Shown: one piece after another, positions 12,127 to 63,337 of the stretch | Position numbering within the stretch: the stretch's first letter is position 1 | How the letters are laid out: the number at the start of each line of letters is the position of its first letter | IMG/VR virus record: IMGVR_UViG_3300023184_000024 | Span: 62,001-126,000 of that record | Reading direction: 5' to 3' (one strand) | Length of the DNA: 64,000 nt | Made by a program: the position numbers and the translations under genes | Notes under the pieces: model-generated | What the model was told of the DNA's origin: nothing | What the model saw: the letters and a program-made list of their open reading frames with translations, nothing else | Database searches by the model: none

Positions 12127-12432
12127 GTGGATAATATATTTGTACAAGCTTGTTTTGACCTGCACTGTGAGTGGAAGGAAACTCCCCCATCGTATCGTGT
12201 TTTTGTAAACAACGAATTGTTTACAGAGCGAACGTATGTATGGACTGACTACTACTTAACAGAAATGTTGCAAATTGAAGCTCCTGCAGGACATTATCAA
12301 ATAACAATAGTTCCAATGGGGCCCGAAGCCGATACATTGATTGTCAACAATTGGGACATAGAATACGGAACTGCTCGATGGCTTACAAAAGAGTCTGAGT
12401 CATTTAAAAACACCTTGGAAATACACCCATGA
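12127..12432 (+). CDS. Hypothetical protein
   Basis: ORF in the operon, preceded by TAAATA at 12117. Confidence 0.55.
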   Translation: MDNIFVQACFDLHCEWKETPPSYRVFVNNELFTERTYVWTDYYLTEMLQIEAPAGHYQITIVPMGPEADTLIVNNWDIEYGTARWLTKESESFKNTLEIHP

Positions 12433-12599
12433 GATGGCGAGAAATAATGGAAAATATCAGCTCAGGGACCACTGGGGCCGGGTCAATTTCTGTGGTCAGC
12501 AATCCCATTGGGAAAGTAATTACCAGAACAGAGAATAAAAAAATAGGTAAATATTCTAATAGTCCAAACCCAACACCGTACAGTAAGAAAAAGGAATAA
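12429..12599 (+). CDS. 56-aa hypothetical protein (below ORF-track cutoff), CTS-like start
   Basis: MRWREIMENISSGTTGAGSISVVSNPIG...KKKE; fills the gap exactly, with ATGA overlap. Confidence 0.65.
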   Translation: MRWREIMENISSGTTGAGSISVVSNPIGKVITRTENKKIGKYSNSPNPTPYSKKKE

Positions 12600-52382: not shown

Positions 52383-52725
52383 TCTCACTGAGCACATCTT
52401 AAATTTGTTGCCCGAGGGTAACCAAATTACAATAGACCAAGCACTTAAAACATGGTATCAAAATATTAGACCCAATGGCGGTCTGCGATTAACCAGTGCT
52501 GGTTATCAGGTCCTGCAGTTATTGAATATCGAATCTTGGACGATAGAATTTGATAATATTAAAAAACATATTTCTCAACGAGAATTGCTGAGCTTAGACC
52601 ATAAAATCAAATACCCTTATTACATTGATTTTAAAGGCAAACGTCTTATTCTATTTTCCAGTAAAGAAGCAATGTTGGCTACACTCTACGGGGACCTAAA
52701 AAAATTCCTTGAAAATTACAGTTGA
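52363..52725 (+). CDS. Hypothetical protein
   Basis: Overlapping operon ORF. Confidence 0.6.
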   Translation: MKTVKRDLTEHILNLLPEGNQITIDQALKTWYQNIRPNGGLRLTSAGYQVLQLLNIESWTIEFDNIKKHISQRELLSLDHKIKYPYYIDFKGKRLILFSSKEAMLATLYGDLKKFLENYS

Positions 52726-52750
52726 CCAGAAATTCAACTTCGGTTATACT
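52722..52750 (+). promoter_or_regulatory. sigma70 early promoter (cassette 1)
   Basis: TTGACC-N17-TATACT. Confidence 0.8.
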
Positions 52751-52777
52751 GTAAGTACAGTAAAAGAAAGGGAATAT

Positions 52778-52945
52778 ATGTCAAAATATACATTTATTGT
52801 TAACCCTAAAGTTAAAGAGATATTGGAATTATCCGATAAACTCCGTGAATGTTTAGAGTATCCCAACAGCGAAAACTCAAGGGATGAGCGACACTACTCA
52901 GAGCATTTTGAAGCTGAGATTATCAAGGTTATCAAGAGAAAATAA
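52778..52945 (+). CDS. 55-aa hypothetical early protein
   Basis: True start is ATG 52778 downstream of the promoter and a GGGA RBS. Confidence 0.6.
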   Translation: MSKYTFIVNPKVKEILELSDKLRECLEYPNSENSRDERHYSEHFEAEIIKVIKRK

Positions 52946-53015: not shown

Positions 53016-53071
53016 GTTGTTAAAAAACAACACAGATTTTGGTTGACCAGAATTGCAAGATCGGTTATAAT
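53016..53071 (+). promoter_or_regulatory. GTTG-N8-CAAC operator plus sigma70 promoter (cassette 2)
   Basis: GTTG(53016)-N8-CAAC(53031); TTGACC(53043)-N17-TATAAT(53071). Confidence 0.8.
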
Positions 53072-53077
53072 ACTAGT

Positions 53078-53416
53078 ATGGAAATTAAAAAAGCAACCCG
53101 CAAAAAACGTGCAGATCGCACTCACATCATTTACCGCATTGAGAGCGGTGCAGACTTCTACATTGGTGTCACAGCCAAAACAGAAAGCACTGTTTTGAAG
53201 AGTGTAAAAACACGCATCAACAAGCACATCTATCGCTCACGTAGCGAAGACAAAAGCTGGGCCTTGTACGAAGCAATTCGTGCTCGCGGCACTGGTGCTT
53301 TCCAGTTCCGTATCGTTGCAGTTGTGCGTGGCAAAACAGAAGCTCACACCGCAGAACGTGCTCTGATCCGTGAACTCAAGCCCAACTTGAACACCGATGT
53401 ACGTGGTGTTGTTTAA
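53078..53416 (+). CDS. GIY-YIG-like nuclease domain protein
   Basis: IIYRIE...FYIGVT; R...H; HxAE..LI..LKPNLN; start ATG 53078. Confidence 0.7.
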
Positions 53417-53464
53417 ACGCAACACTACATTTTGGTTGACCAGAATTCGCCAATTTCGTATAAT
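53408..53464 (+). promoter_or_regulatory. GTTG-N8-CAAC operator plus sigma70 promoter (cassette 3)
   Basis: GTTG(53408)-N8-CAAC(53423); TTGACC(53436)-N17-TATAAT(53464); AAGGAG RBS. Confidence 0.85.
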
Positions 53465-53494
53465 ACGAGTATAGTAAACAAAAAGGAGTCAAAT

Positions 53495-53779
53495 ATGTCA
53501 TACGTAATCGTTGCAAAAGGTACCGGTTTAATTGTCACAGACGGTCCCAACAAAACCCGTGCCTACAAAACATTTGGTGCCGCTAAAGCAACTCGTACCC
53601 GTCTCTGCACCAAAGCAGGGTGGACAGAAGACCAACTCAACATTGTGGATCGCATCACTTACACCGCTCCCCAGAGACGGATGACTGTACTCAACTTGAT
53701 GACAGGCAAGCCTGTTGAGATTGATGCTGACACACCTTGGGCTTGCCGTGTAGACAGCGAAACATACTGGAGCAATTAA
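53495..53779 (+). CDS. Hypothetical early protein
   Basis: True start ATG 53495 after AAGGAG; C-terminal TPW.C.VDSETYW motif. Confidence 0.7.
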   Translation: MSYVIVAKGTGLIVTDGPNKTRAYKTFGAAKATRTRLCTKAGWTEDQLNIVDRITYTAPQRRMTVLNLMTGKPVEIDADTPWACRVDSETYWSN

Positions 53780-54723: not shown

Positions 54724-54755
54724 GGTTGACCAGAAATACCCATTTTGCTATAATA
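54724..54755 (+). promoter_or_regulatory. sigma70 promoter (cassette 4), 32 bp identical to 55029-55060
   Basis: GGTTGACCAGAAATACCCATTTTGCTATAATA. Confidence 0.85.
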
Positions 54756-54783
54756 CGAGTATAGTAAGAAAAAGGAGCTAAAA

Positions 54784-55011
54784 ATGATTCATCAAAACAT
54801 ACAAAAACTCATCAATGATTACCAGGAAATTCTGGACCGAGATCCCATGGATCAGAAGGAAGACACTCAAAGCATTCTCACTCGCTTTGCCCAAGTATTG
54901 GCCACAGAGCTAGGCGAAATCGTAGTAGCAAGTCCTTACATGGAAGGCGTTCACATGTACTTTGACGAGAAGATTGCTCGCTATGAAATTAAGCAAGCAG
55001 TAGGGTTGTAA
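54784..55011 (+). CDS. Hypothetical early protein
   Basis: AAGGAG RBS after the promoter. Confidence 0.7.
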   Translation: MIHQNIQKLINDYQEILDRDPMDQKEDTQSILTRFAQVLATELGEIVVASPYMEGVHMYFDEKIARYEIKQAVGL

Positions 55012-55060
55012 AAAAACAACGGTATTTTGGTTGACCAGAAATACCCATTTTGCTATAATA
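55005..55060 (+). promoter_or_regulatory. GTTG-N8-CAAC operator plus sigma70 promoter (cassette 5)
   Basis: GTTG(55005)-N8-CAAC(55020); TTGACC(55031)-N17-TATAAT(55059). Confidence 0.85.
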
Positions 55061-55089
55061 GAAGTATAGTAAGAAACAAGGAGCACTAA

Positions 55090-55467
55090 ATGACTACAGA
55101 CTTCAAAAGTTGGGACGAGTTAAGCGATTTGGAACAAGCCCAAGCCACTTTTTGGGACATGTATAAGGACGCCTACGGTGTTCGTCCCCGTGGTGTTGAT
55201 ACCTCTGCTTGGACTCTTGATGATTTTACATCTGAGTTTGTGATCCTTGGTCAAGCCATTGACCGTGAAGAGACAGCTCGCAAGGCGTCAGAAGCTCAGG
55301 CTGTCACAGCCTTTGAGCGCCGTATTGCTGAATTGATCAGCACAGGCGCCCGGGACTATGAAATGGCTCTGCGCTGGATTCACGAAGCCGAAGAGACTCG
55401 TGGCGACGATGACTATCTTGCCTGGACTCTGGGCTTGCCCTATCAATACTTCCGCAAAGCGGCTTAA
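55090..55467 (+). CDS. Hypothetical early protein
   Basis: AAGGAG RBS; YKDAYGVRPRG motif. Confidence 0.72.
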   Translation: MTTDFKSWDELSDLEQAQATFWDMYKDAYGVRPRGVDTSAWTLDDFTSEFVILGQAIDREETARKASEAQAVTAFERRIAELISTGARDYEMALRWIHEAEETRGDDDYLAWTLGLPYQYFRKAA

Positions 55468-55476
55468 GGAGCAACA

Positions 55477-55899
55477 ATGAAACACACTATTCTACTAGAA
55501 AATGGTACATATCTGCAGGTCAATGACCTGGGCTGGACTGAGCGTAAGACGCCCCGGCAGTACAAAAACCTGGCAGAAGCCCAACATCATTTACAATGGG
55601 GCATTGCCATGTGCCACACCAATGTCAAACTCAGAACAGACTACATTGCGGCCTATCATCGAGACAAAACTAGATTTGAAAAGGCTGTTGCCAAAGAACA
55701 GTCTCTAATCAAAAAGCTAGAGACACAACCTTATAACAAGGTAGCAGATCAGATTAAGAAAGCACTATTCAACATTGATCAACTCACTGTTAAGTTTTAT
55801 CCCAAAAGCCGTCTTGAGGACTTCAAGCGTGACACCAAGTTTTTGGCGAGTGCCAAAAGAGTACTGGCCAACAACCCCAGAGTTGTTGCTTTAGGTTGA
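55477..55899 (+). CDS. Hypothetical protein
   Basis: AAGGAG RBS. Confidence 0.68.
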   Translation: MKHTILLENGTYLQVNDLGWTERKTPRQYKNLAEAQHHLQWGIAMCHTNVKLRTDYIAAYHRDKTRFEKAVAKEQSLIKKLETQPYNKVADQIKKALFNIDQLTVKFYPKSRLEDFKRDTKFLASAKRVLANNPRVVALG

Positions 55900-55924
55900 C
55901 CAAAAAGGTCCAATTTAGTATAAT
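55896..55924 (+). promoter_or_regulatory. sigma70 promoter (cassette 6)
   Basis: TTGACC-N17-TATAAT, then CATAGTAAGAAAAAGGAG. Confidence 0.85.
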
Positions 55925-55953
55925 ACAAGCATAGTAAGAAAAAGGAGAACACA

Positions 55954-56265
55954 ATGATTGCAGAACTAAATCGATTAAAAGCATTAAAAGAAAGCCCCAG
56001 CCGTGGCGTCAGGGATGAGATTGAGATTTCTCAACTGGAAACTATGCTGGGCCAGAGTGCCTATTATGATCAACGACATGGCGGTCCTTACGATCGCGGT
56101 CAGGCAGACAGCTACTACGGTCGCGACTATATGCCGCATTACTTTGTGAGAGACACTCACCGTAGTCCTAGAATTGACATGGCGCAGATGACTGAGCATG
56201 AGATTGTGGCCTATACCGCAGGCTATCGCGACAACGAAGCCAATGGCGATAAGAAGGAGTGGTAA
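55954..56265 (+). CDS. Hypothetical early protein
   Basis: RHGGPYDRG.ADSYY motif; AAGGAG RBS. Confidence 0.7.
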   Translation: MIAELNRLKALKESPSRGVRDEIEISQLETMLGQSAYYDQRHGGPYDRGQADSYYGRDYMPHYFVRDTHRSPRIDMAQMTEHEIVAYTAGYRDNEANGDKKEW

Positions 56266-59519: not shown

Positions 59520-61274
59520 ATGACACACTCGATTGCACTAGTACAAGCCAATGATATAATAGGTAACAATGTTAGGTTACCATTGGCCATCGGTGTACTT
59601 TGGCAGCAGGCAATGACTAGTACACTTAATTCTAACAAGTGGGAATTAGAAAAAATAGTTCACGCTAAATTACCCGTAAACGAAACAGCACAACAATTGT
59701 CGCACTGCGATGTTGTTGCATTTAGTTGCTATGTGTGGAACTTTGAATACCACATGCAACTGGCACAAGCTATTAAAAAAATAAACCCAACTTGCTTTGT
59801 AGTAGTTGGTGGTCCTCAAATACACACAGGGTTTGTGGACTTTTGGCCAGCATGGGGACACTGCATAGACTTTGCATTACTGGGCGAAGGTGACAACAGT
59901 TTTTGCCAATTGTTGGAACAGTGGCCCGCCCAACAAAGCAGTGCCATTCCGGGTGCCTGGACCAAAGACTGGTGTCAAGGCGAAGCACCAAGAACTGAAA
60001 ACCTAACTACATTACCCAGTCCGTACTTGAACGGATTCTACGATTCAATCATCCAAGAAGAAACAGCCAAGGGCCATTATATTGAAGCTGTGCTCCAGAC
60101 CAATCGAGGATGCCCATACCATTGTACTTTTTGTGAAGAAGGCAAAGAGTACAAAAATAAAATGTTCTTCTACGACGAAAAACAAATACGCCAAGAAATA
60201 GAATGGTTTGGTATCAACAAAATTGAAATGGTGGACATTGCCGATGACAATTGGGGAATTGCTGACAGAGATGTTGACCTCATGCAGTATATCTGTGAAA
60301 CAAAACTCAAATACGGATACCCCAACGTGCTCGATGCCACGTATGCCAAGAATGCTCCTGATCGATTATGGGCAATTGCCAAGATAGATCATCGATTCGG
60401 AACCAAGTTGATCAGAGGTATAACATTTGCATATCAAAGCAACAACACAGAAACACTGTCTGCAATTAAAAGATTCAATCTTGTGCCAGACAAGCAGTAC
60501 CAACTGATCAAAAAGCTAAAAAGTATCGGAACTCCTACCTACGTAGAAATGATCTGGCCACTGCCGTATGAAACATATCAAACATTTTGTCAGGGCATTG
60601 ACGACACAATCGACCTAGGACTTGATACTTGGTTACAAGTGTACACCTTGGGTATGAGTCCTTCCACTGATTTATATGATGATTTCGTCAACAGCTACGA
60701 CTTGGCTGCTAGTAAAAGTAATCAAAGTTTTATACCTGCGTTTGCAACCCCTGTCAGTAATAAGTGGGTGACCAACGAAACAATGATACAAGGGCAGGTA
60801 TTTTATACGTGGCTAGCGGTGCTGTATTATTTTGGGTTTGCAAGGCCTGTACTTGAATGGTTTAAATTATCAAAGGGACAAACAATCACTCAAACTGTTG
60901 ATAAATTCATTGAGTTTGCCGGCTCAGACACAACGTTGTGTGCATACAAAGAAAAAATCAACAACTACTGGCAACAAAGTATTTTAAAACAACCATTGCC
61001 TGACATTGGTATGTTTAAAAATTCCACAGACTTTTGGCAACCATACACGCATCTGGCCAGCTGGTTACAACACGATCATGACAATTTTATAGTCAGCGTC
61101 GGCGAATTTTTAGAATCACAACAGTTAGATACATCGGACATATCAAGGTTGACAGAGAAACTCAAACACTGTATAGTTAAGTTTTCCCACAGTGATGCTG
61201 ACAAGTTTTTTAATTTTTGCCAGCAATACTATTTCTACAAACGAAAATCTGGTGCATCTTATGTGTCGCCATAA
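59520..61274 (+). CDS. Cobalamin-binding radical SAM protein
   Basis: N-terminal LPLAIGVL, AFSCYVWN and VVGGPQ (B12-binding domain); TNRGCPYHCTFC. Confidence 0.88.
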   Translation: MTHSIALVQANDIIGNNVRLPLAIGVLWQQAMTSTLNSNKWELEKIVHAKLPVNETAQQLSHCDVVAFSCYVWNFEYHMQLAQAIKKINPTCFVVVGGPQIHTGFVDFWPAWGHCIDFALLGEGDNSFCQLLEQWPAQQSSAIPGAWTKDWCQGEAPRTENLTTLPSPYLNGFYDSIIQEETAKGHYIEAVLQTNRGCPYHCTFCEEGKEYKNKMFFYDEKQIRQEIEWFGINKIEMVDIADDNWGIADRDVDLMQYICETKLKYGYPNVLDATYAKNAPDRLWAIAKIDHRFGTKLIRGITFAYQSNNTETLSAIKRFNLVPDKQYQLIKKLKSIGTPTYVEMIWPLPYETYQTFCQGIDDTIDLGLDTWLQVYTLGMSPSTDLYDDFVNSYDLAASKSNQSFIPAFATPVSNKWVTNETMIQGQVFYTWLAVLYYFGFARPVLEWFKLSKGQTITQTVDKFIEFAGSDTTLCAYKEKINNYWQQSILKQPLPDIGMFKNSTDFWQPYTHLASWLQHDHDNFIVSVGEFLESQQLDTSDISRLTEKLKHCIVKFSHSDADKFFNFCQQYYFYKRKSGASYVSP

Positions 61275-61327
61275 TGTTGTTTTTTGACAACATACTGGTT
61301 GACAAGGTATAAATAAACACATATAAT
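61275..61327 (+). promoter_or_regulatory. TGTTG-N8-CAACA operator plus sigma70 promoter of the attenuator/tRNA region
   Basis: GTTG(61276)-N8-CAAC(61291); TTGACA(61299)-N17-TATAAT(61327). Confidence 0.8.
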
Positions 61328-61337
61328 AGAGACTATA

Positions 61338-61448
61338 ATGAACTCCGCTCATTTAAACGCACTGTCAGGACAGCAGAAAACTACAAGTTATTTGTGGTCA
61401 CCTGTCTGCCCACGTACAATTGATAATGAGATACCGGGTTCTGAGTAG
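61338..61448 (+). CDS. Putative 36-aa leader peptide
   Basis: MNSAHLNALSGQQKTTSYLWSPVCPRTIDNEIPGSE*; begins near the predicted TSS; the stop lies in the 5' arm of the antiterminator. Confidence 0.45.
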   Translation: MNSAHLNALSGQQKTTSYLWSPVCPRTIDNEIPGSE

Positions 61449-61513
61449 AATCAAATTTAACACATTTTTTACTCAGAACCCCGGGAATTAAAACTTCCGG
61501 GGTTTTGTTTTTT
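61436..61513 (+). terminator. Intrinsic terminator with overlapping antiterminator hairpin (attenuator)
   Basis: GGGTTCTGAGTA(61436)/TACTCAGAACCC(61481) 12-bp stem overlaps terminator AACCCCGG(61477)...CCGGGGTT(61504) plus T-tract. Confidence 0.75.
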
Positions 61514-61521
61514 AGGACAAC

Positions 61522-61689
61522 ATGAAAACAGAAAACGATTTATATAAAAGAATTGAAGAGAAGAACAACATCTTGTGCAAAGATCTGTACAAACAGCTCA
61601 TTGACGGTAAAATGCAACGAGCTTCTATTCAGCATCGAGCACATCAGAAATTAAAAGATACTACAAAATCTTCTCAGAAATCAATGTAG
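61522..61689 (+). CDS. 55-aa basic hypothetical protein (below ORF-track cutoff)
   Basis: AGGA RBS; first ORF after the terminator. Confidence 0.5.
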   Translation: MKTENDLYKRIEEKNNILCKDLYKQLIDGKMQRASIQHRAHQKLKDTTKSSQKSM

Positions 61690-61793
61690 TATCAAAGTGT
61701 TGACAGGAAACGAGGTCCTGTGCTACACTCAAAACAAGCACAAACGGGCGGTAACGAGGATGGCTTATCTTTTTGTAGATAAAAAAATTCGTT

Positions 61794-61858
61794 ATATTGA
61801 AGCATTCTTGTCCATGGAGTTGGGAACGGGAAGATAAACCGTGAGAGTGTTTCAATAT
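61794..61858 (+). other. Long hairpin in tRNA-cluster spacer
   Basis: ATATTGAAGCATTCT / AGAGTGTTTCAATAT, 15-bp stem with GU pairs. Confidence 0.6.
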
Positions 61859-61888
61859 GCACATTCCTCAGAGTGTGTTATTGAATTT

Positions 61889-61963
61889 ATCGCTGTCGTT
61901 CAACGAACAGGACACCATGCTACGAACGTGGGAATGGAGGTTTGATTCCTTCCAGCGATACCA
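61889..61963 (+). tRNA. tRNA-Arg(ACG), non-canonical elbow
   Basis: ATCGCTG/CAGCGAT acceptor, CUACGAA loop, CCA; D-loop G18A19 and T-loop U56. Confidence 0.8.
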
Positions 61964-61965
61964 GG

Positions 61966-61994
61966 TTGACCAATAATTGGTTTGGTAGTATAAT
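61966..61994 (+). promoter_or_regulatory. sigma70-type promoter
   Basis: GGTTGACC-N17-TATAAT directly after tRNA-Arg. Confidence 0.8.
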
Positions 61995-62015: not shown

Positions 62016-62210
62016 ATGAAGCACAAGATGATCGTGCCACAACGTAACCCCTTCGTTGTGTTGGCACTAAAACGCAAAGCGGGTAGTCATCGCAAGAGCA
62101 ACAAAGCTCTGCGTCGATGCGAAAAATCTAGGGATCGTGGTGAAGCGGTATCACAGCAGACTTTTAATCTGCCAATCCCGAGTTCGAATCTCGGCGGTCC
62201 CACCATATAA
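62016..62210 (+). CDS. Small basic protein whose 3' end overlaps tRNA-Lys
   Basis: AAGGAG RBS; QRNPFVVLALKRKAGSHRKSNKALRR; the frame continues through the tRNA. Confidence 0.5.
   Translation: MKHKMIVPQRNPFVVLALKRKAGSHRKSNKALRRCEKSRDRGEAVSQQTFNLPIPSSNLGGPTI
62131..62205 (+). tRNA. tRNA-Lys(TTT)
   Basis: GCAGA-CTTTTAA-TCTGC anticodon arm; TTCGAAT; CCA. Confidence 0.92.
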
Positions 62211-62271
62211 AAACACATTGGTGTTGGTTTAACAAATAAGTAAACCTAGTTATAGTGTGTTTCTATATGGT
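62202..62271 (+). other. Long hairpin in tRNA-cluster spacer
   Basis: ACCATATA/TATATGGT plus AAACACAT/GTGTGTTT and inner GGTTTA/TAAACC. Confidence 0.6.
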
Positions 62272-62277
62272 AGAGTT

Positions 62278-62541: not shown

Positions 62542-62633
62542 ACCTCGGTAGTTTAACGGTAAAACAGCGGATTTATATCCCGTGCGCAACAGATAATTGG
62601 CCAATGTGGGTTCAACTCCCGCCCGAGGTACCA
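62542..62633 (+). tRNA. tRNA with TAT anticodon (nominal Ile-AUA) and a 22-nt variable arm
   Basis: ACCTCGG/CCGAGGT acceptor, TTTATAT loop (anticodon 62574-62576), 7/5 fold, A73, CCA. Confidence 0.75.
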
Positions 62634-62731: not shown

Positions 62732-63337
62732 ATGCCAGCAGTATTTTTAGTCAGTGATACACACTTCGGACACGCTGGTGTGTGTCGCTTCATGCACCCC
62801 GATGATCCTGAAGTAAAATTACGGCCGTGGACTGATCCCGATGAGATGGATGAGGAAATGGTGCGACGATGGAACGACCGTGTGCGACCCAACGACAAGG
62901 TCTACCATTTGGGCGATGTTGTCATCAACCGTAAGGCCATGAAAACCTTGCATCGCTTGAATGGTGACAAGGTGTTGATACGCGGCAACCATGACATCTT
63001 CCGTGACGAGGAGTACAGAGAACACTTTCGTGAGTTGCGAGCATACCATGTCATGAACGGAATGATCTTGAGTCATATTCCTGTGCACGAAGCCAGCTTG
63101 GGCAGGTTTGGTACAAACATTCACGGACACTTGCACGCCAGTCGTGTAAAGAAAGTGCGTGGCTACGATGTCGAAACAGGTACCATGTTGTACAGCAACG
63201 AGATTGATCCACGCTACCATTGTGTCTGCGTAGAACAAACCGACTACACGCCCATCTTGTTTGAAGATGTGATCAAACGCATTGAAGCAGAAGGCGGTAG
63301 TGTGGGATTTAAAAACGGCAACGGACCAACTATGTAA
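62732..63337 (+). CDS. Calcineurin-like metallophosphoesterase
   Basis: SDTHFGH, HLGDV, RGNHD, LSHIP, HGHLH. Confidence 0.92.
   Translation: MPAVFLVSDTHFGHAGVCRFMHPDDPEVKLRPWTDPDEMDEEMVRRWNDRVRPNDKVYHLGDVVINRKAMKTLHRLNGDKVLIRGNHDIFRDEEYREHFRELRAYHVMNGMILSHIPVHEASLGRFGTNIHGHLHASRVKKVRGYDVETGTMLYSNEIDPRYHCVCVEQTDYTPILFEDVIKRIEAEGGSVGFKNGNGPTM

What the first reader, a model, noticed from the sequence alone, without database searches (positions are those of the whole stretch)
61299..61513. Leader-peptide transcription attenuator upstream of the phage tRNA cluster
Seen: consensus promoter, then a 36-codon ORF, then a perfect 12-bp hairpin (61436-61481) that overlaps and excludes an intrinsic terminator (61477-61513). 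The leader stop codon lies in the hairpin 5' arm. Known: this is classical attenuation geometry, where complete translation blocks the antiterminator and early stalling permits read-through. The leader contains AAC/AAT, AAA, ACA, AGT, TGG, CGT and ATA codons, read by the downstream Asn, Lys, Thr, Ser, Trp, Arg and UAU tRNAs (this could be partly chance). Inference: a sensor that raises phage tRNA output when host tRNAs are depleted or cleaved by anticodon nucleases. I know of no described phage tRNA attenuator. Downstream promoters (61700, 61966) mean control may be partial or limited to the 55-aa ORF.
Basis: partly seen in the sequence, partly recalled or inferred. Interest (0 to 1): 0.8.

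Follow-up and report, generated by a model that had tools for sequence, protein, structure and literature searches.

The report
Phage promoter-proximal hairpin–terminator switch
Behind a perfect promoter in an uncultured 353-kb phage lies a strongly conserved 180-base leader in which a hairpin competes with a terminator; it probably throttles a small gene and the first tRNA downstream, but the proposed tRNA-sensing leader peptide is not shown.

Summary
A 12/12 sigma-70 promoter (61299-61327) is followed by a 36-codon ORF (61338-61448) whose stop lies in the 5' arm of a perfect 12-bp hairpin (H1). H1 shares CCC 61479-81, or up to 6 nt, with the only strong intrinsic terminator in the 64-kb window.

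Two strain haplotypes differ by 33.5% at four-fold sites. Even so, 61294-61356 and 61425-61507 are the two longest identical runs in 2 kb, loops included.

Upstream RNA engages the terminator's 5' arm more strongly here (-10 kcal/mol) than at any of 73 terminators from related phages. Masking H1's 5' arm, as a ribosome at codons 30 to stop would, raises the modelled terminator probability from 0.03-0.5 to 1.0. orf55 has no promoter of its own, and in two strains neither does tRNA-Arg.

The tRNA-sensor reading is not supported:
- Codons read by the downstream tRNAs are not enriched (10/36 against 23.5%, P=0.33), and there is no codon run.
- There is no Shine-Dalgarno sequence, and the AUG lies 3 nt from the predicted start.
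- The peptide evolves neutrally.
- Most of the tRNAs have their own promoters.
- Only this phage species carries the element, so covariation cannot be tested.

Best guess (0.4): a translation-coupled attenuator that reads through by default.

Side finding: a widespread small ORF family with no stop codon of its own runs into tRNA genes.

The parts
61275..61292 (+). Small AT-rich hairpin (TGTTGT / TTTTTG / ACAACA) just after the stop codon of the B12-binding radical-SAM gene. Similar hairpins precede paralogous promoters.
   Evidence: Read. Similar copies at 53016-53031 and 55005-55020. The A61287G change in haplotype 2 keeps a wobble pair.
61299..61327 (+). Sigma-70-type promoter TTGACA-17-TATAAT (12/12). 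It is a diverged member of a phage promoter family (GGTTGACC-17-TATAAT-N5-TATAGT...).
   Evidence: Invariant from -35 to +22 between haplotypes (run 61294-61356).
61334..61339 (+). Second TATAAT, corresponding to the family's TATAGT element. It holds the predicted transcription start (A61335) and the first two bases of the ATG.
   Evidence: Promoter alignment. The start site is inferred from the usual 7-8 nt distance and pyrimidine-purine rule, not measured.
61338..61448 (+). 36-codon ORF (MNSAHLNALSGQQKTTSYLWSPVCPRTIDNEIPGSE), stop TAG in the 5' arm of H1. No Shine-Dalgarno sequence.
   Evidence: Open in both haplotypes, with no indels. The peptide is 75% identical between haplotypes, against 91.6% for the neighbouring gene.
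61340..61353 (+). Segment 1 (GAACUCCGCUCAUU). It can pair with segment 2 and resembles segment 3 (GAACCCCG).
   Evidence: MFE and RNAalifold consensus. The gain from pairing is -10.8 kcal/mol against -4.9 +/- 2.5 in shuffles, P=0.019. Invariant.
61357..61424 (+). Variable centre of the leader (14 substitutions in 68 nt). It contains a conserved small hairpin, 61380-61386 / 61392-61398.
   Evidence: One compensatory pair, C61371-G61404 to A-U.
61425..61441 (+). Segment 2 (AAUGAG AUAC CGGGUUC), the partner of segment 1. It overlaps the base of the H1 5' arm.
61434..61484 (+). Hairpin H1, the candidate antiterminator. The perfect 12-bp core is 61436-47 / 61470-81 with a 22-nt A/U-rich loop. An outer CC:GG extension has a bulged C.
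   Evidence: Invariant, loop included. It engages the terminator's 5' arm by -10 kcal/mol, beyond all 73 natural terminators compared.
61479..61513 (+). Intrinsic terminator: 8-bp G+C-rich stem, 8-nt loop, U tract TTTTGTTTTTT.
   Evidence: It is the only strong terminator in the window. Invariant apart from one extra T in the U tract of haplotype 2.
61514..61689 (+). orf55 with its ribosome-binding site (AGGA 61514-17; AAGG in haplotype 2) and ATG 61522. It is the first gene that depends on read-through.
   Evidence: Five synonymous against six nonsynonymous codon changes. It is an ORFan restricted to this phage species.
61700..61729 (+). Promoter TTGACA-18-TACACT before tRNA-Arg. It is present in the window, L088 and L090 and absent in L087 and L089.
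61889..61963 (+). tRNA-Arg(ACG), the first tRNA downstream. In L087 and L089 it has no promoter between it and the terminator.

Best explanation
The region 61299-61513 is a promoter-proximal conditional terminator (an attenuator in the broad sense). It sits at the head of a transcription unit that carries orf55 and continues into tRNA-Arg and the tRNA cluster.

Proposed mechanism:
- Host RNA polymerase starts at about A61335 from a consensus promoter.
- As the RNA emerges, hairpin H1 forms and holds the first 3-6 bases of the terminator's 5' arm. This weakens the terminator, so the default state is partial read-through.
- If a ribosome that began at AUG 61338 reaches roughly codon 30 or the stop codon before the polymerase leaves the U tract, it covers H1's 5' arm. 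The full terminator then forms and transcription stops.
- Slow or failed translation of the 36 codons therefore increases read-through.

On this reading the element reports general translation capacity and is not tuned to the seven downstream tRNAs.

Shown: the parts, their strong conservation, the unusual engagement of the terminator arm, and the lack of a promoter for orf55.
Inferred: the start site, translation of the ORF, and the switching itself.
For: - Promoter, ORF, H1 and terminator are present as described.
- 61425-61507 (83 nt) and 61294-61356 (63 nt) are the two longest identical runs in a 2-kb comparison of haplotypes that differ at 33.5% of four-fold sites.
- Pairing of the terminator's 5' arm to upstream RNA gains -10.0 kcal/mol. 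For 73 terminators from related phage loci the figure is -2.0 +/- 2.3, with a minimum of -8.5.
- With a 30-nt ribosome mask, P(terminator base pairs) is 1.0 for A-site codon 32 or the stop, 0.03-0.5 for earlier positions and 0.2 for free RNA, in both haplotypes.
- The same on/off profile along the ORF appears in the E. coli thrL and pheL positive controls.
- The stop codon lies inside H1's 5' arm. The frame is open in both haplotypes after 14 substitutions with no indel.
- orf55's ribosome-binding site starts 1 nt after the U tract, with no promoter between. L087 and L089 also lack a promoter before tRNA-Arg.
- The phage does use start codons at the transcript 5' end. Gene 53078-53416 starts 7 nt after the -10 of family promoter P53043, and L095 1714-1932 does likewise.
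Against: - There is no Shine-Dalgarno sequence, and the AUG is predicted at +4. Short leaders cut leaderless initiation several-fold (PMC8459731).
- The ATG sits in a promoter-proximal element that is untranslated in six paralogous promoters, so it may be incidental.
- The ORF is open by chance in 16% of shuffles.
- Codon-usage score is 0.012 per codon, below 99.7% of in-frame windows of real genes.
- There are no tandem regulatory codons.
- The overlap with the core terminator stem is only 3 G-C pairs and the two states are isoenergetic, so H1 is a weak antiterminator.
- The invariant loops (30 nt without a change; 0.665^30 is about 5e-6) are not required by this model.
- Free RNA is predicted to be antiterminated, unlike the classical attenuators.
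- There are no relatives beyond one species, so there is no covariation evidence.
Confidence: 0.4

Rival explanations
1. The same hairpin/terminator switch is flipped by something other than a ribosome. A phage or host RNA-binding protein, a small RNA or a ligand would recognise the invariant H1 loop or the 5' end and decide between H1 and the terminator. The ORF would be incidental.
For: - Every base of the 22-nt H1 loop, the 8-nt terminator loop, the 17-nt promoter spacer and the first 22 transcribed bases is invariant at 33.5% neutral divergence. A ribosome-only model does not need this.
- There is no Shine-Dalgarno sequence.
- The ATG lies in a family promoter element.
- orf55 depends on read-through.
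Against: - No Rfam family matches. The best hits have E of 0.29 or more and lie far below gathering scores.
- No candidate factor was identified.
- This reading leaves unexplained the ORF ending exactly in H1's 5' arm and staying open (joint chance about 0.07).
Confidence: 0.2
2. It is a free-standing small-RNA gene. The consensus promoter and strong terminator produce an abundant RNA of about 175-180 nt that acts in trans. The conserved 5' end or H1 loop would serve as a seed, and the two 3' hairpins and U tail as a chaperone platform. orf55 would be fed only by leakage. A dual role is possible, as with the attenuator-derived sRNA rnTrpL of Sinorhizobium (PMC6614838, listed).
For: - It pairs the strongest promoter with the strongest terminator in the region.
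- The conservation pattern is invariant 5' 22 nt, variable centre and invariant 3' 83 nt including loops.
- The consensus fold has a closing helix and one compensatory pair.
- The peptide is not under selection.
Against: - No target in the 64-kb window pairs with the conserved segments better than with shuffled seeds.
- orf55, with a maintained ribosome-binding site, sits directly behind the U tract without a promoter.
- The unusual overlap of H1 with the terminator has no role in this reading.
Confidence: 0.2
3. It is an ordinary, constitutively leaky terminator with an adjacent stabilising hairpin. It merely sets a fixed ratio between a strong promoter and the downstream genes, and the overlap and the ORF are coincidences.
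For: - The MFE of the whole leader holds both hairpins side by side.
- The overlap with the core stem is only 3 nt and branch migration is isoenergetic.
- The downstream tRNAs have promoters of their own.
Against: - Engagement of the terminator arm exceeds that of all 73 natural terminators compared.
- Invariance of the loops and the 5' end is more than a fixed-strength terminator needs.
- The phage otherwise hardly uses canonical terminators.
Confidence: 0.15
4. The 36-codon ORF is a normal small-protein gene, and H1 plus the terminator is simply its 3' end.
For: The frame is open in both haplotypes.
Against: - 9 of 10 changed codons are nonsynonymous.
- Substitutions fall 7/3/4 on codon positions 1/2/3, against 42/19/143 in the neighbouring gene. 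The binomial P for 4 or fewer of 14 at position 3 is about 0.002, by my arithmetic.
- No family hit in Pfam, NCBIfam or PHROGs.
- The ORF is never called as a gene.
Confidence: 0.03

Closest known systems
Ribosome-mediated attenuators of amino-acid operons (E. coli thrL, pheL, trpL, hisL, leuL)
   Same: A short ORF lies upstream of an intrinsic terminator, with an alternative hairpin that takes the terminator's 5' arm. A ribosome near the stop codon frees the terminator. In the same masking model, thrL and pheL show the same position-dependent profile.
   Different: - The classical leaders have Shine-Dalgarno sites and runs of cognate codons (peptides printed).
- They terminate when untranslated: arm engagement in free RNA is 0, against -9.6 here.
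- Here there is no codon run and no Shine-Dalgarno sequence, and the AUG is at +4.
- The overlap is only 3-6 nt, and the regulated genes are an ORFan and tRNAs.
- No Rfam leader family matches (His_leader 18 bits against 49 needed).
Translation-stress-sensing leader-ORF attenuators of antibiotic-resistance genes (for example the mef(E)/mel leader, PMC4335068, abstract seen; the wider class is recalled from memory)
   Same: The logic is the same: normal translation of a short upstream ORF allows termination, and ribosome stalling or slowing gives read-through. No amino-acid-specific codon run is needed.
   Different: Those elements sense drug-stalled ribosomes at defined peptide motifs and are bacterial. 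Here no stalling motif is known and translation of the ORF is unproven.
Lambda PR'-tR' unit (6S RNA) with sigma-dependent promoter-proximal pause and Q antitermination (from memory, not tested)
   Same: A strong promoter, a -10-like hexamer at the very start of the transcript, a terminator about 180-190 nt downstream, and downstream genes that need read-through.
   Different: The -10-like element here is a trait of a whole promoter family whose other members have no terminator. The upstream gene is a radical-SAM enzyme, not a Q-like protein. No Q-binding element was identified.
Attenuator-derived trans-acting sRNA rnTrpL (PMC6614838, PMC7968998; abstracts)
   Same: A terminated leader transcript that could have a function of its own. 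That would explain why the loops and the 5' end are invariant.
   Different: No target was found, and there is no sequence relationship.

Membership tests
Leader-peptide (ribosome-mediated) transcription attenuator | Intrinsic terminator between the promoter and the first regulated gene | tested here: met
   Terminator at 61479-61513. The orf55 ribosome-binding site is at 61514, with no promoter between.
Leader-peptide (ribosome-mediated) transcription attenuator | Alternative (antiterminator) helix that uses part of the terminator's 5' arm | tested here: met
   H1 takes 61479-81, or up to 61484 with a bulge. The gain is -10.0 kcal/mol against -2.0 +/- 2.3 for 73 natural terminators. The overlap is short and the two states are isoenergetic.
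Leader-peptide (ribosome-mediated) transcription attenuator | Short ORF with a working translation start in the leader | tested here: inconclusive
   An ATG ORF is present and open in both haplotypes. However, there is no Shine-Dalgarno sequence, the AUG is predicted at +4, and the ORF was never called as a gene. Leaderless genes do exist in this phage. Translation cannot be measured here.
Leader-peptide (ribosome-mediated) transcription attenuator | ORF end placed so that a terminating ribosome masks the antiterminator | tested here: met
   The stop, 61446-48, lies inside H1's 5' arm. The masking model gives P(terminator)=1.0 for codons 32 to stop and a sharp change at codons 29-30.
Leader-peptide (ribosome-mediated) transcription attenuator | Run or enrichment of codons for the sensed amino acid or tRNA | tested here: not met
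   There are no tandem codons. 10 of 36 codons are read by the seven downstream tRNAs, against 23.5% in 72 phage genes (P=0.33).
Leader-peptide (ribosome-mediated) transcription attenuator | Anti-antiterminator (1:2) pairing that gives termination when the leader is untranslated | tested here: inconclusive
   A 13-bp interrupted helix, 61340-53 with 61425-41, is better than shuffles (P=0.019 for segment 2; P=0.07-0.18 for the H1 arm alone). It does not keep H1 off the terminator arm in prefix folds.
Leader-peptide (ribosome-mediated) transcription attenuator | Alternative stems kept by covariation in relatives | not testable with these tools
   Only two haplotypes exist in all collections searched, and they are identical across both stems.
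T-box tRNA-sensing riboswitch | Match to the T-box covariance model (Stem I, specifier loop, T-box sequence) | tested here: not met
   No T-box match at E up to 10 in 61250-61900, or at E up to 1 in the 13.7-kb locus.
Any curated Rfam family (leaders, riboswitches, sRNAs) | Score at or above the family's gathering threshold | tested here: not met
   The best hits are SpF39 at 24 bits (60 needed), rnk leader at 21 (55) and His_leader at 18 (49).
Lambda-type Q antitermination unit (PR'-tR') | Promoter-proximal -10-like pause element together with an adjacent antiterminator gene and its binding element | tested here: inconclusive
   A -10-like TATAAT lies at 61334-39, but it is shared with terminator-less family promoters. 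The upstream gene is a B12-binding radical-SAM enzyme. No search for Q-like genes elsewhere in the genome was made.
Trans-acting small RNA | Own promoter and terminator, with a conserved single-stranded seed that has complementary targets | tested here: inconclusive
   Promoter, terminator and a conserved 5' end are present. No phage target in the window scores above shuffled-seed level. Host targets cannot be examined because the host is unknown.

The most novel reading that the evidence does not exclude
A lytic jumbo phage carries a leader-ORF attenuator that senses failing translation in the infected cell, for instance after host tRNAs are cut or depleted by a defence system. It answers by letting its strongest early promoter read into orf55, tRNA-Arg(ACG) and the tRNA cluster. 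The single conserved CGU codon (61413-15) sits at the last position where a stalled ribosome still leaves H1 intact, and that position gave the lowest modelled terminator probability (0.03-0.06). In strains without P61700, tRNA-Arg(ACG) is the tRNA that depends on read-through.
Probability: 0.15. Interest if true: 0.75.

Novelty: new variant of a known kind. Interest (0 to 1): 0.45.

Why it matters
Phage tRNAs are now known to counter tRNA-targeting defences (for example PMC11555353, listed). How phages regulate their tRNA genes is barely studied, and two full-text searches found no description of an attenuator in a phage tRNA region.

If this element does couple read-through to translation capacity, it would be a simple feedback loop by which a phage raises its own translation supplies when the host's fail.

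Even if the trigger is something else, this is a clearly selected regulatory RNA of about 180 nt in an uncultured 353-kb phage. It is defined well enough to be synthesised and tested in vitro with E. coli RNA polymerase.

Tried and rejected
- GenBank phages: near, distant and protein searches found no relative of the region, only tRNA-Arg matches.
- Radical-SAM gene as anchor: the best relative is 59% identical, and its neighbours are not syntenic.
- Metallophosphoesterase gene as anchor: at least 594 relatives and 80 loci fetched, but only the gene itself is conserved. The leader, orf55 and the 36-aa ORF are absent by blastn and tblastn.
- orf55 protein search: only its own cluster and one 93% variant, whose 503-bp contig starts inside the terminator loop.
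- Exact DNA pattern scans of IMG/VR and JGI metagenomes returned only the source contig.
- More distant phages that share the ORF64/tRNA-Lys module (L093, L095, L096) have consensus promoters among their tRNAs but no terminator or leader of this kind.
- No covariance model was built, because two haplotypes that are identical in the stems would give a sequence-only model.
- Codon-tRNA enrichment was rejected.
- sRNA targets in the window were rejected.
- DNA half-site GGGTTCTGAGTA as a repeated operator: there are no further copies above chance.
- Minus-strand terminator function was rejected by reading the sequence. No T tract follows either hairpin on that strand.
- My first 'arm engagement' control on E. 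coli leaders gave 0 for free RNA, as the classical model predicts. It became informative only with ribosome masks.
- ArfA homology of ORF64 is not supported by Pfam, NCBIfam, PHROGs, PDB sequence or profile searches, or the ESM Atlas.
Full report
SOURCE AND SETTING

The window is part of IMGVR_UViG_3300023184_000024, a 352,754-bp viral contig. Nearly all genes lie on the + strand.

From about 52.7 kb onward the window holds a run of host-type promoters and small ORFs, followed by a tRNA cluster. ARAGORN finds 9 tRNAs in the window and 17 in the locus that extends 3.3 kb past it.

The finding lies between a B12-binding radical-SAM gene (59520-61274) and a 55-codon ORF (61522-61689). tRNA-Arg(ACG) follows at 61889.

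THE OBSERVATION

- Promoter: TTGACA 61299, 17 nt, TATAAT to 61327. It is the only 12/12 promoter match in 56-64 kb.
- ORF: ATG 61338 to TAG 61446-48.
- Hairpin H1: a perfect 12-bp stem, 61436-47 / 61470-81, with a 22-nt loop.
- Terminator: CCCCGGGA 61479-86 / UUCCGGGG 61495-502, followed by UUUUGUUUUUU.

Two refinements apply.
- First, H1 can grow to 15 bp inward. It can also add CC61434-35:GG61483-84 with one bulged C, so it can hold up to six bases of the terminator's 5' arm before the 3' arm is made (prefix folds).
- Second, 'excludes' overstates the case. 'H1 full + upper 5 bp of the terminator' (-23.6 kcal/mol) and 'H1 9 bp + full terminator' (-23.3) are isoenergetic, and the MFE of the whole leader contains both hairpins.

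The leader folds far better than shuffles (z = -4.66). This terminator is the only one of its quality in 64 kb; elsewhere the scans give chance-level counts.

RELATIVES

No GenBank phage resembles the region.
- The radical-SAM gene has no relative between 59% and 90% identity, and the distant ones are not syntenic.
- The metallophosphoesterase gene inside the tRNA cluster (62732-63337) has at least 594 relatives in IMG/VR at 80-93% amino-acid identity. Only the gene itself is shared. Neither the leader DNA nor the 36-aa or 55-aa products occur in the 80 loci fetched.
- orf55 is an ORFan.
- Exact-pattern scans of IMG/VR and JGI metagenomes returned only the source contig.

Strain-level contigs were found through protein clusters: L086 (identical) and L087, L088 and L089 (a second haplotype). 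The comparative evidence therefore rests on two haplotypes.

WHAT THE TWO HAPLOTYPES SAY

In the radical-SAM gene they differ at 11.1% of bases and at 33.5% of four-fold degenerate sites (60 of 179). Differences fall 42/19/143 on codon positions 1/2/3.

Against that background, the two longest identical runs in 2 kb are these:
- 61425-61507 (83 nt): segment 2, H1 with its loop, and the terminator with its loop.
- 61294-61356 (63 nt): the -35 element through +22.

At the neutral rate, 83 unchanged bases have a probability of about 2e-15, and the 30 loop bases alone about 5e-6 (my arithmetic).

The 68 nt between them (61357-61424) carry 14 substitutions (20.6%) and no indel.
- The substitutions fall 7/3/4 on codon positions.
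- They change 9 of the 10 affected codons at the amino-acid level.
- The peptide is therefore not under selection. With 70% expected at position 3, the binomial P for 4 or fewer of 14 is about 0.002.
- This excludes an ordinary small-protein gene but not a leader peptide.

The frame remains open, which happens in 47% of random trials. It is open in the first place in 16% of dinucleotide shuffles.

RNAalifold on the pair gives the following:
- a closing helix, 61340-53 with 61425-41;
- a central stem with one compensatory change, C61371-G61404 to A-U;
- a conserved small hairpin, 61380-98;
- H1 and the terminator.

One compensatory pair proves nothing.

IS THE HAIRPIN-TERMINATOR OVERLAP MEANINGFUL?

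I measured how much free energy the terminator's 5' arm gains by pairing with upstream RNA before its own 3' arm exists.
- For 73 distinct terminators in the related phage loci this is -2.0 +/- 2.3 kcal/mol, with a minimum of -8.5.
- Here it is -10.0.

With a 30-nt ribosome mask moved along the ORF, the arm stays engaged (-10 to -12) for A-site codons 1-28. It is released (-1) from codon 30 to the stop. In partition-function terms, the terminator's bottom pairs go from 0.03-0.5 to 1.0, in both haplotypes.

The same procedure was run on E. coli K-12 leaders fetched from the annotated genome. It gives the expected pattern for thrL and pheL: engagement when the ribosome sits on the Thr/Ile or Phe codons, and none at the stop. 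The signals for trpL, hisL and leuL are weaker.

One clear difference emerges. The classical leaders show no engagement in free RNA, so they terminate when untranslated. This leader is engaged in free RNA (-9.6). The 61340-53 / 61425-41 helix is better than chance (P = 0.019) but does not displace H1 in the prefix folds. The predicted default is therefore read-through, with termination only when translation is completed in time.

IS THE ORF TRANSLATED?

This is the weak point.

P61299 is a diverged member of a promoter family at 52720, 53041, 53434, 54724, 55029 and 55894. The family pattern is GGTTGACC-17-TATAAT-N5-TATAGTAAGAAAAAGGAG-N-ATG. Its second TATAAT (61334-39) corresponds to the family's TATAGT element, which contains the likely start site and is untranslated in the paralogues. 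Those paralogues then carry strong Shine-Dalgarno sites.

Here the ATG is formed by TATAAT+G, there is no Shine-Dalgarno sequence, and the predicted start (A61335) leaves a 3-nt leader.

Reporter data for Caulobacter give about 0.45 x i^-0.91 of leaderless efficiency, roughly 17% at 3 nt. The same paper reports E. coli as more sensitive (PMC8459731).

On the other side, this phage group does use 5'-terminal start codons.
- The called gene 53078-53416 begins 7 nt after the -10 of P53043.
- L095 1714-1932 begins 7 nt after a 12/12 promoter.

No gene caller ever called the 36-codon ORF. Its codon-usage score is below 99.7% of real in-frame windows, though above 98.9% of off-frame ones.

THE tRNA LINK

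The leader's codons that are read by the seven downstream tRNAs number 10 of 36. The expectation from 72 genes in the window is 23.5% (P = 0.33). There is no run of any codon.

tRNA-Lys onward have their own promoters at 61966 and 62229. What strictly depends on read-through is orf55.
- Its ribosome-binding site starts 1 nt after the U tract.
- The site is kept as AGGA or AAGG in the two haplotypes.
- Its substitutions are half synonymous.

In L087 and L089 the stretch between orf55 and tRNA-Arg is replaced by unrelated sequence without a recognisable promoter. In those strains tRNA-Arg(ACG) also depends on read-through. No terminator follows, so read-through from the strongest promoter of the region would add to transcription of the whole cluster.

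RIVAL READINGS

- A non-ribosomal trigger would explain the invariant loops, spacer and 5' end. No Rfam family comes near threshold and no factor is known.
- A free-standing small RNA fits the conservation pattern. No target in the window pairs better than with shuffled seeds, and this reading gives the overlap no role.
- A fixed leaky terminator is hard to square with the outlier engagement value and the loop conservation.
- More distant phages that share the neighbouring ORF64/tRNA-Lys module have promoters among their tRNAs but nothing like this leader. The element is a species-level invention, not a general feature of these tRNA clusters.

VERDICT

The feature is real, selected and unusual. 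I rate a translation-coupled attenuator with default read-through as the single most likely mechanism (0.4). It would sense general translation capacity and would not be tuned to specific tRNAs. The specific tRNA-depletion sensor is possible but unsupported (0.15).

No described phage tRNA attenuator turned up in two full-text searches.

SIDE FINDING

The ORF at 62016-62210 has its own promoter and a strong AAGGAG site. It has no stop codon before tRNA-Lys (62131-62205), and it reads through the tRNA.
- Its first ~38 residues (MK.K....RNPFVVLALKRKAGSHRKSNKALRR.EK) define a family of 52 clusters at 90% identity and 590 representative clusters at 50% identity.
- The family has variable tails.
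- 65 of 165 tails match three-frame translations of phage tRNA genes, against 5 of 165 reversed controls.
- An AGT/TCG switch at the invariant serine shows selection on the protein.
- One relative (L096) also encodes a tmRNA.
- No Pfam, NCBIfam, PHROGs or PDB match exists.

RNase P cleavage at the tRNA 5' end would leave a non-stop mRNA. That is the expression logic of the rescue factors ArfA and BrfA (PMC8012679). This is a lead, not a result.

Noticed in passing
window 62016-62210 (with tRNA-Lys 62131-62205); L093 5001-5195; L095 1929-2105; L096 5001-5177: A small basic ORF with a strong ribosome-binding site has no stop codon of its own and runs into the tRNA-Lys gene. Its ~38-aa N-terminus defines a large uncharacterised family of 590 clusters at 50% identity. 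At least 39% of the family's variable tails are translated tRNA genes. Cleavage by RNase P would give a non-stop mRNA, as for ArfA and BrfA. There is no hit in Pfam, NCBIfam, PHROGs or PDB.
   Followed up: partly
window 52720-52785, 53041-53090, 53434-53499, 54724-54789, 55029-55094, 55894-55959, and 61297-61340: A family of near-consensus promoters has a conserved second -10-like hexamer (TATAGT) 5 nt after the TATAAT and a shared 5' UTR (AAGAAAAAGGAG). Each is preceded by a small GTTGT...ACAAC hairpin. The function of the second hexamer is unknown; it could be start-site context or a sigma-dependent pause.
   Followed up: partly
window 53078-53416; L095 1714-1932: These genes have an ATG lying 7 nt after the -10 hexamer of a strong promoter, so they are apparently leaderless mRNAs in this phage group.
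   Followed up: partly
L001 11480-11900, 12300-12560, 12830-13030 (contig bases just past the window end): Long G+C-rich, structured-looking spacers lie between tRNA genes, each behind a promoter or a tRNA, with no Rfam match. The only hit is a 23-bit sub-threshold match to permuted tmRNA at 12271-12492. They may be unknown stable RNAs.
   Followed up: no
L096 2018-2396: A related 285-kb phage contig encodes a tmRNA (tag ANDEQFALAA) inside its tRNA region, 2.6 kb upstream of its copy of the stop-less ORF.
   Followed up: no
window 61690-61888; L087 2590-2788; L090 215-408: The spacer between orf55 and tRNA-Arg exists in three unrelated versions among strains. All end in the same hairpin (CACATT...AGTGTG) just before the tRNA. 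One version lacks the promoter.
   Followed up: partly
window 62732-63337 and loci L006-L084: The metallophosphoesterase gene is conserved at 80-93% amino-acid identity in at least 594 viral contigs, while its flanks are unrelated. In most relatives a terminator with covarying stem sequences follows it directly; here a tRNA-Met does. It behaves like a mobile cassette of tRNA regions.
   Followed up: partly
window 62542-62633: tRNA-Ile(UAU) is 92 nt long, with a large insertion or variable arm. L095 has a similar 91-nt tRNA-Ile(UAU).
   Followed up: no
window 61848-61861, 62258-62275; L001 12548-12565: The motif AGTGTGTTTC(A/T)ATATG recurs shortly before tRNA genes or tRNA runs. It may be a start or processing signal.
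   Followed up: no
window 61149-61203: An 11/12 promoter match (TTGACA-17-TATAGT) lies inside the 3' end of the radical-SAM gene. It is conserved in L087 and followed by a 46-nt run with no strain differences (61158-61203), which is unusual for coding sequence here.
   Followed up: no
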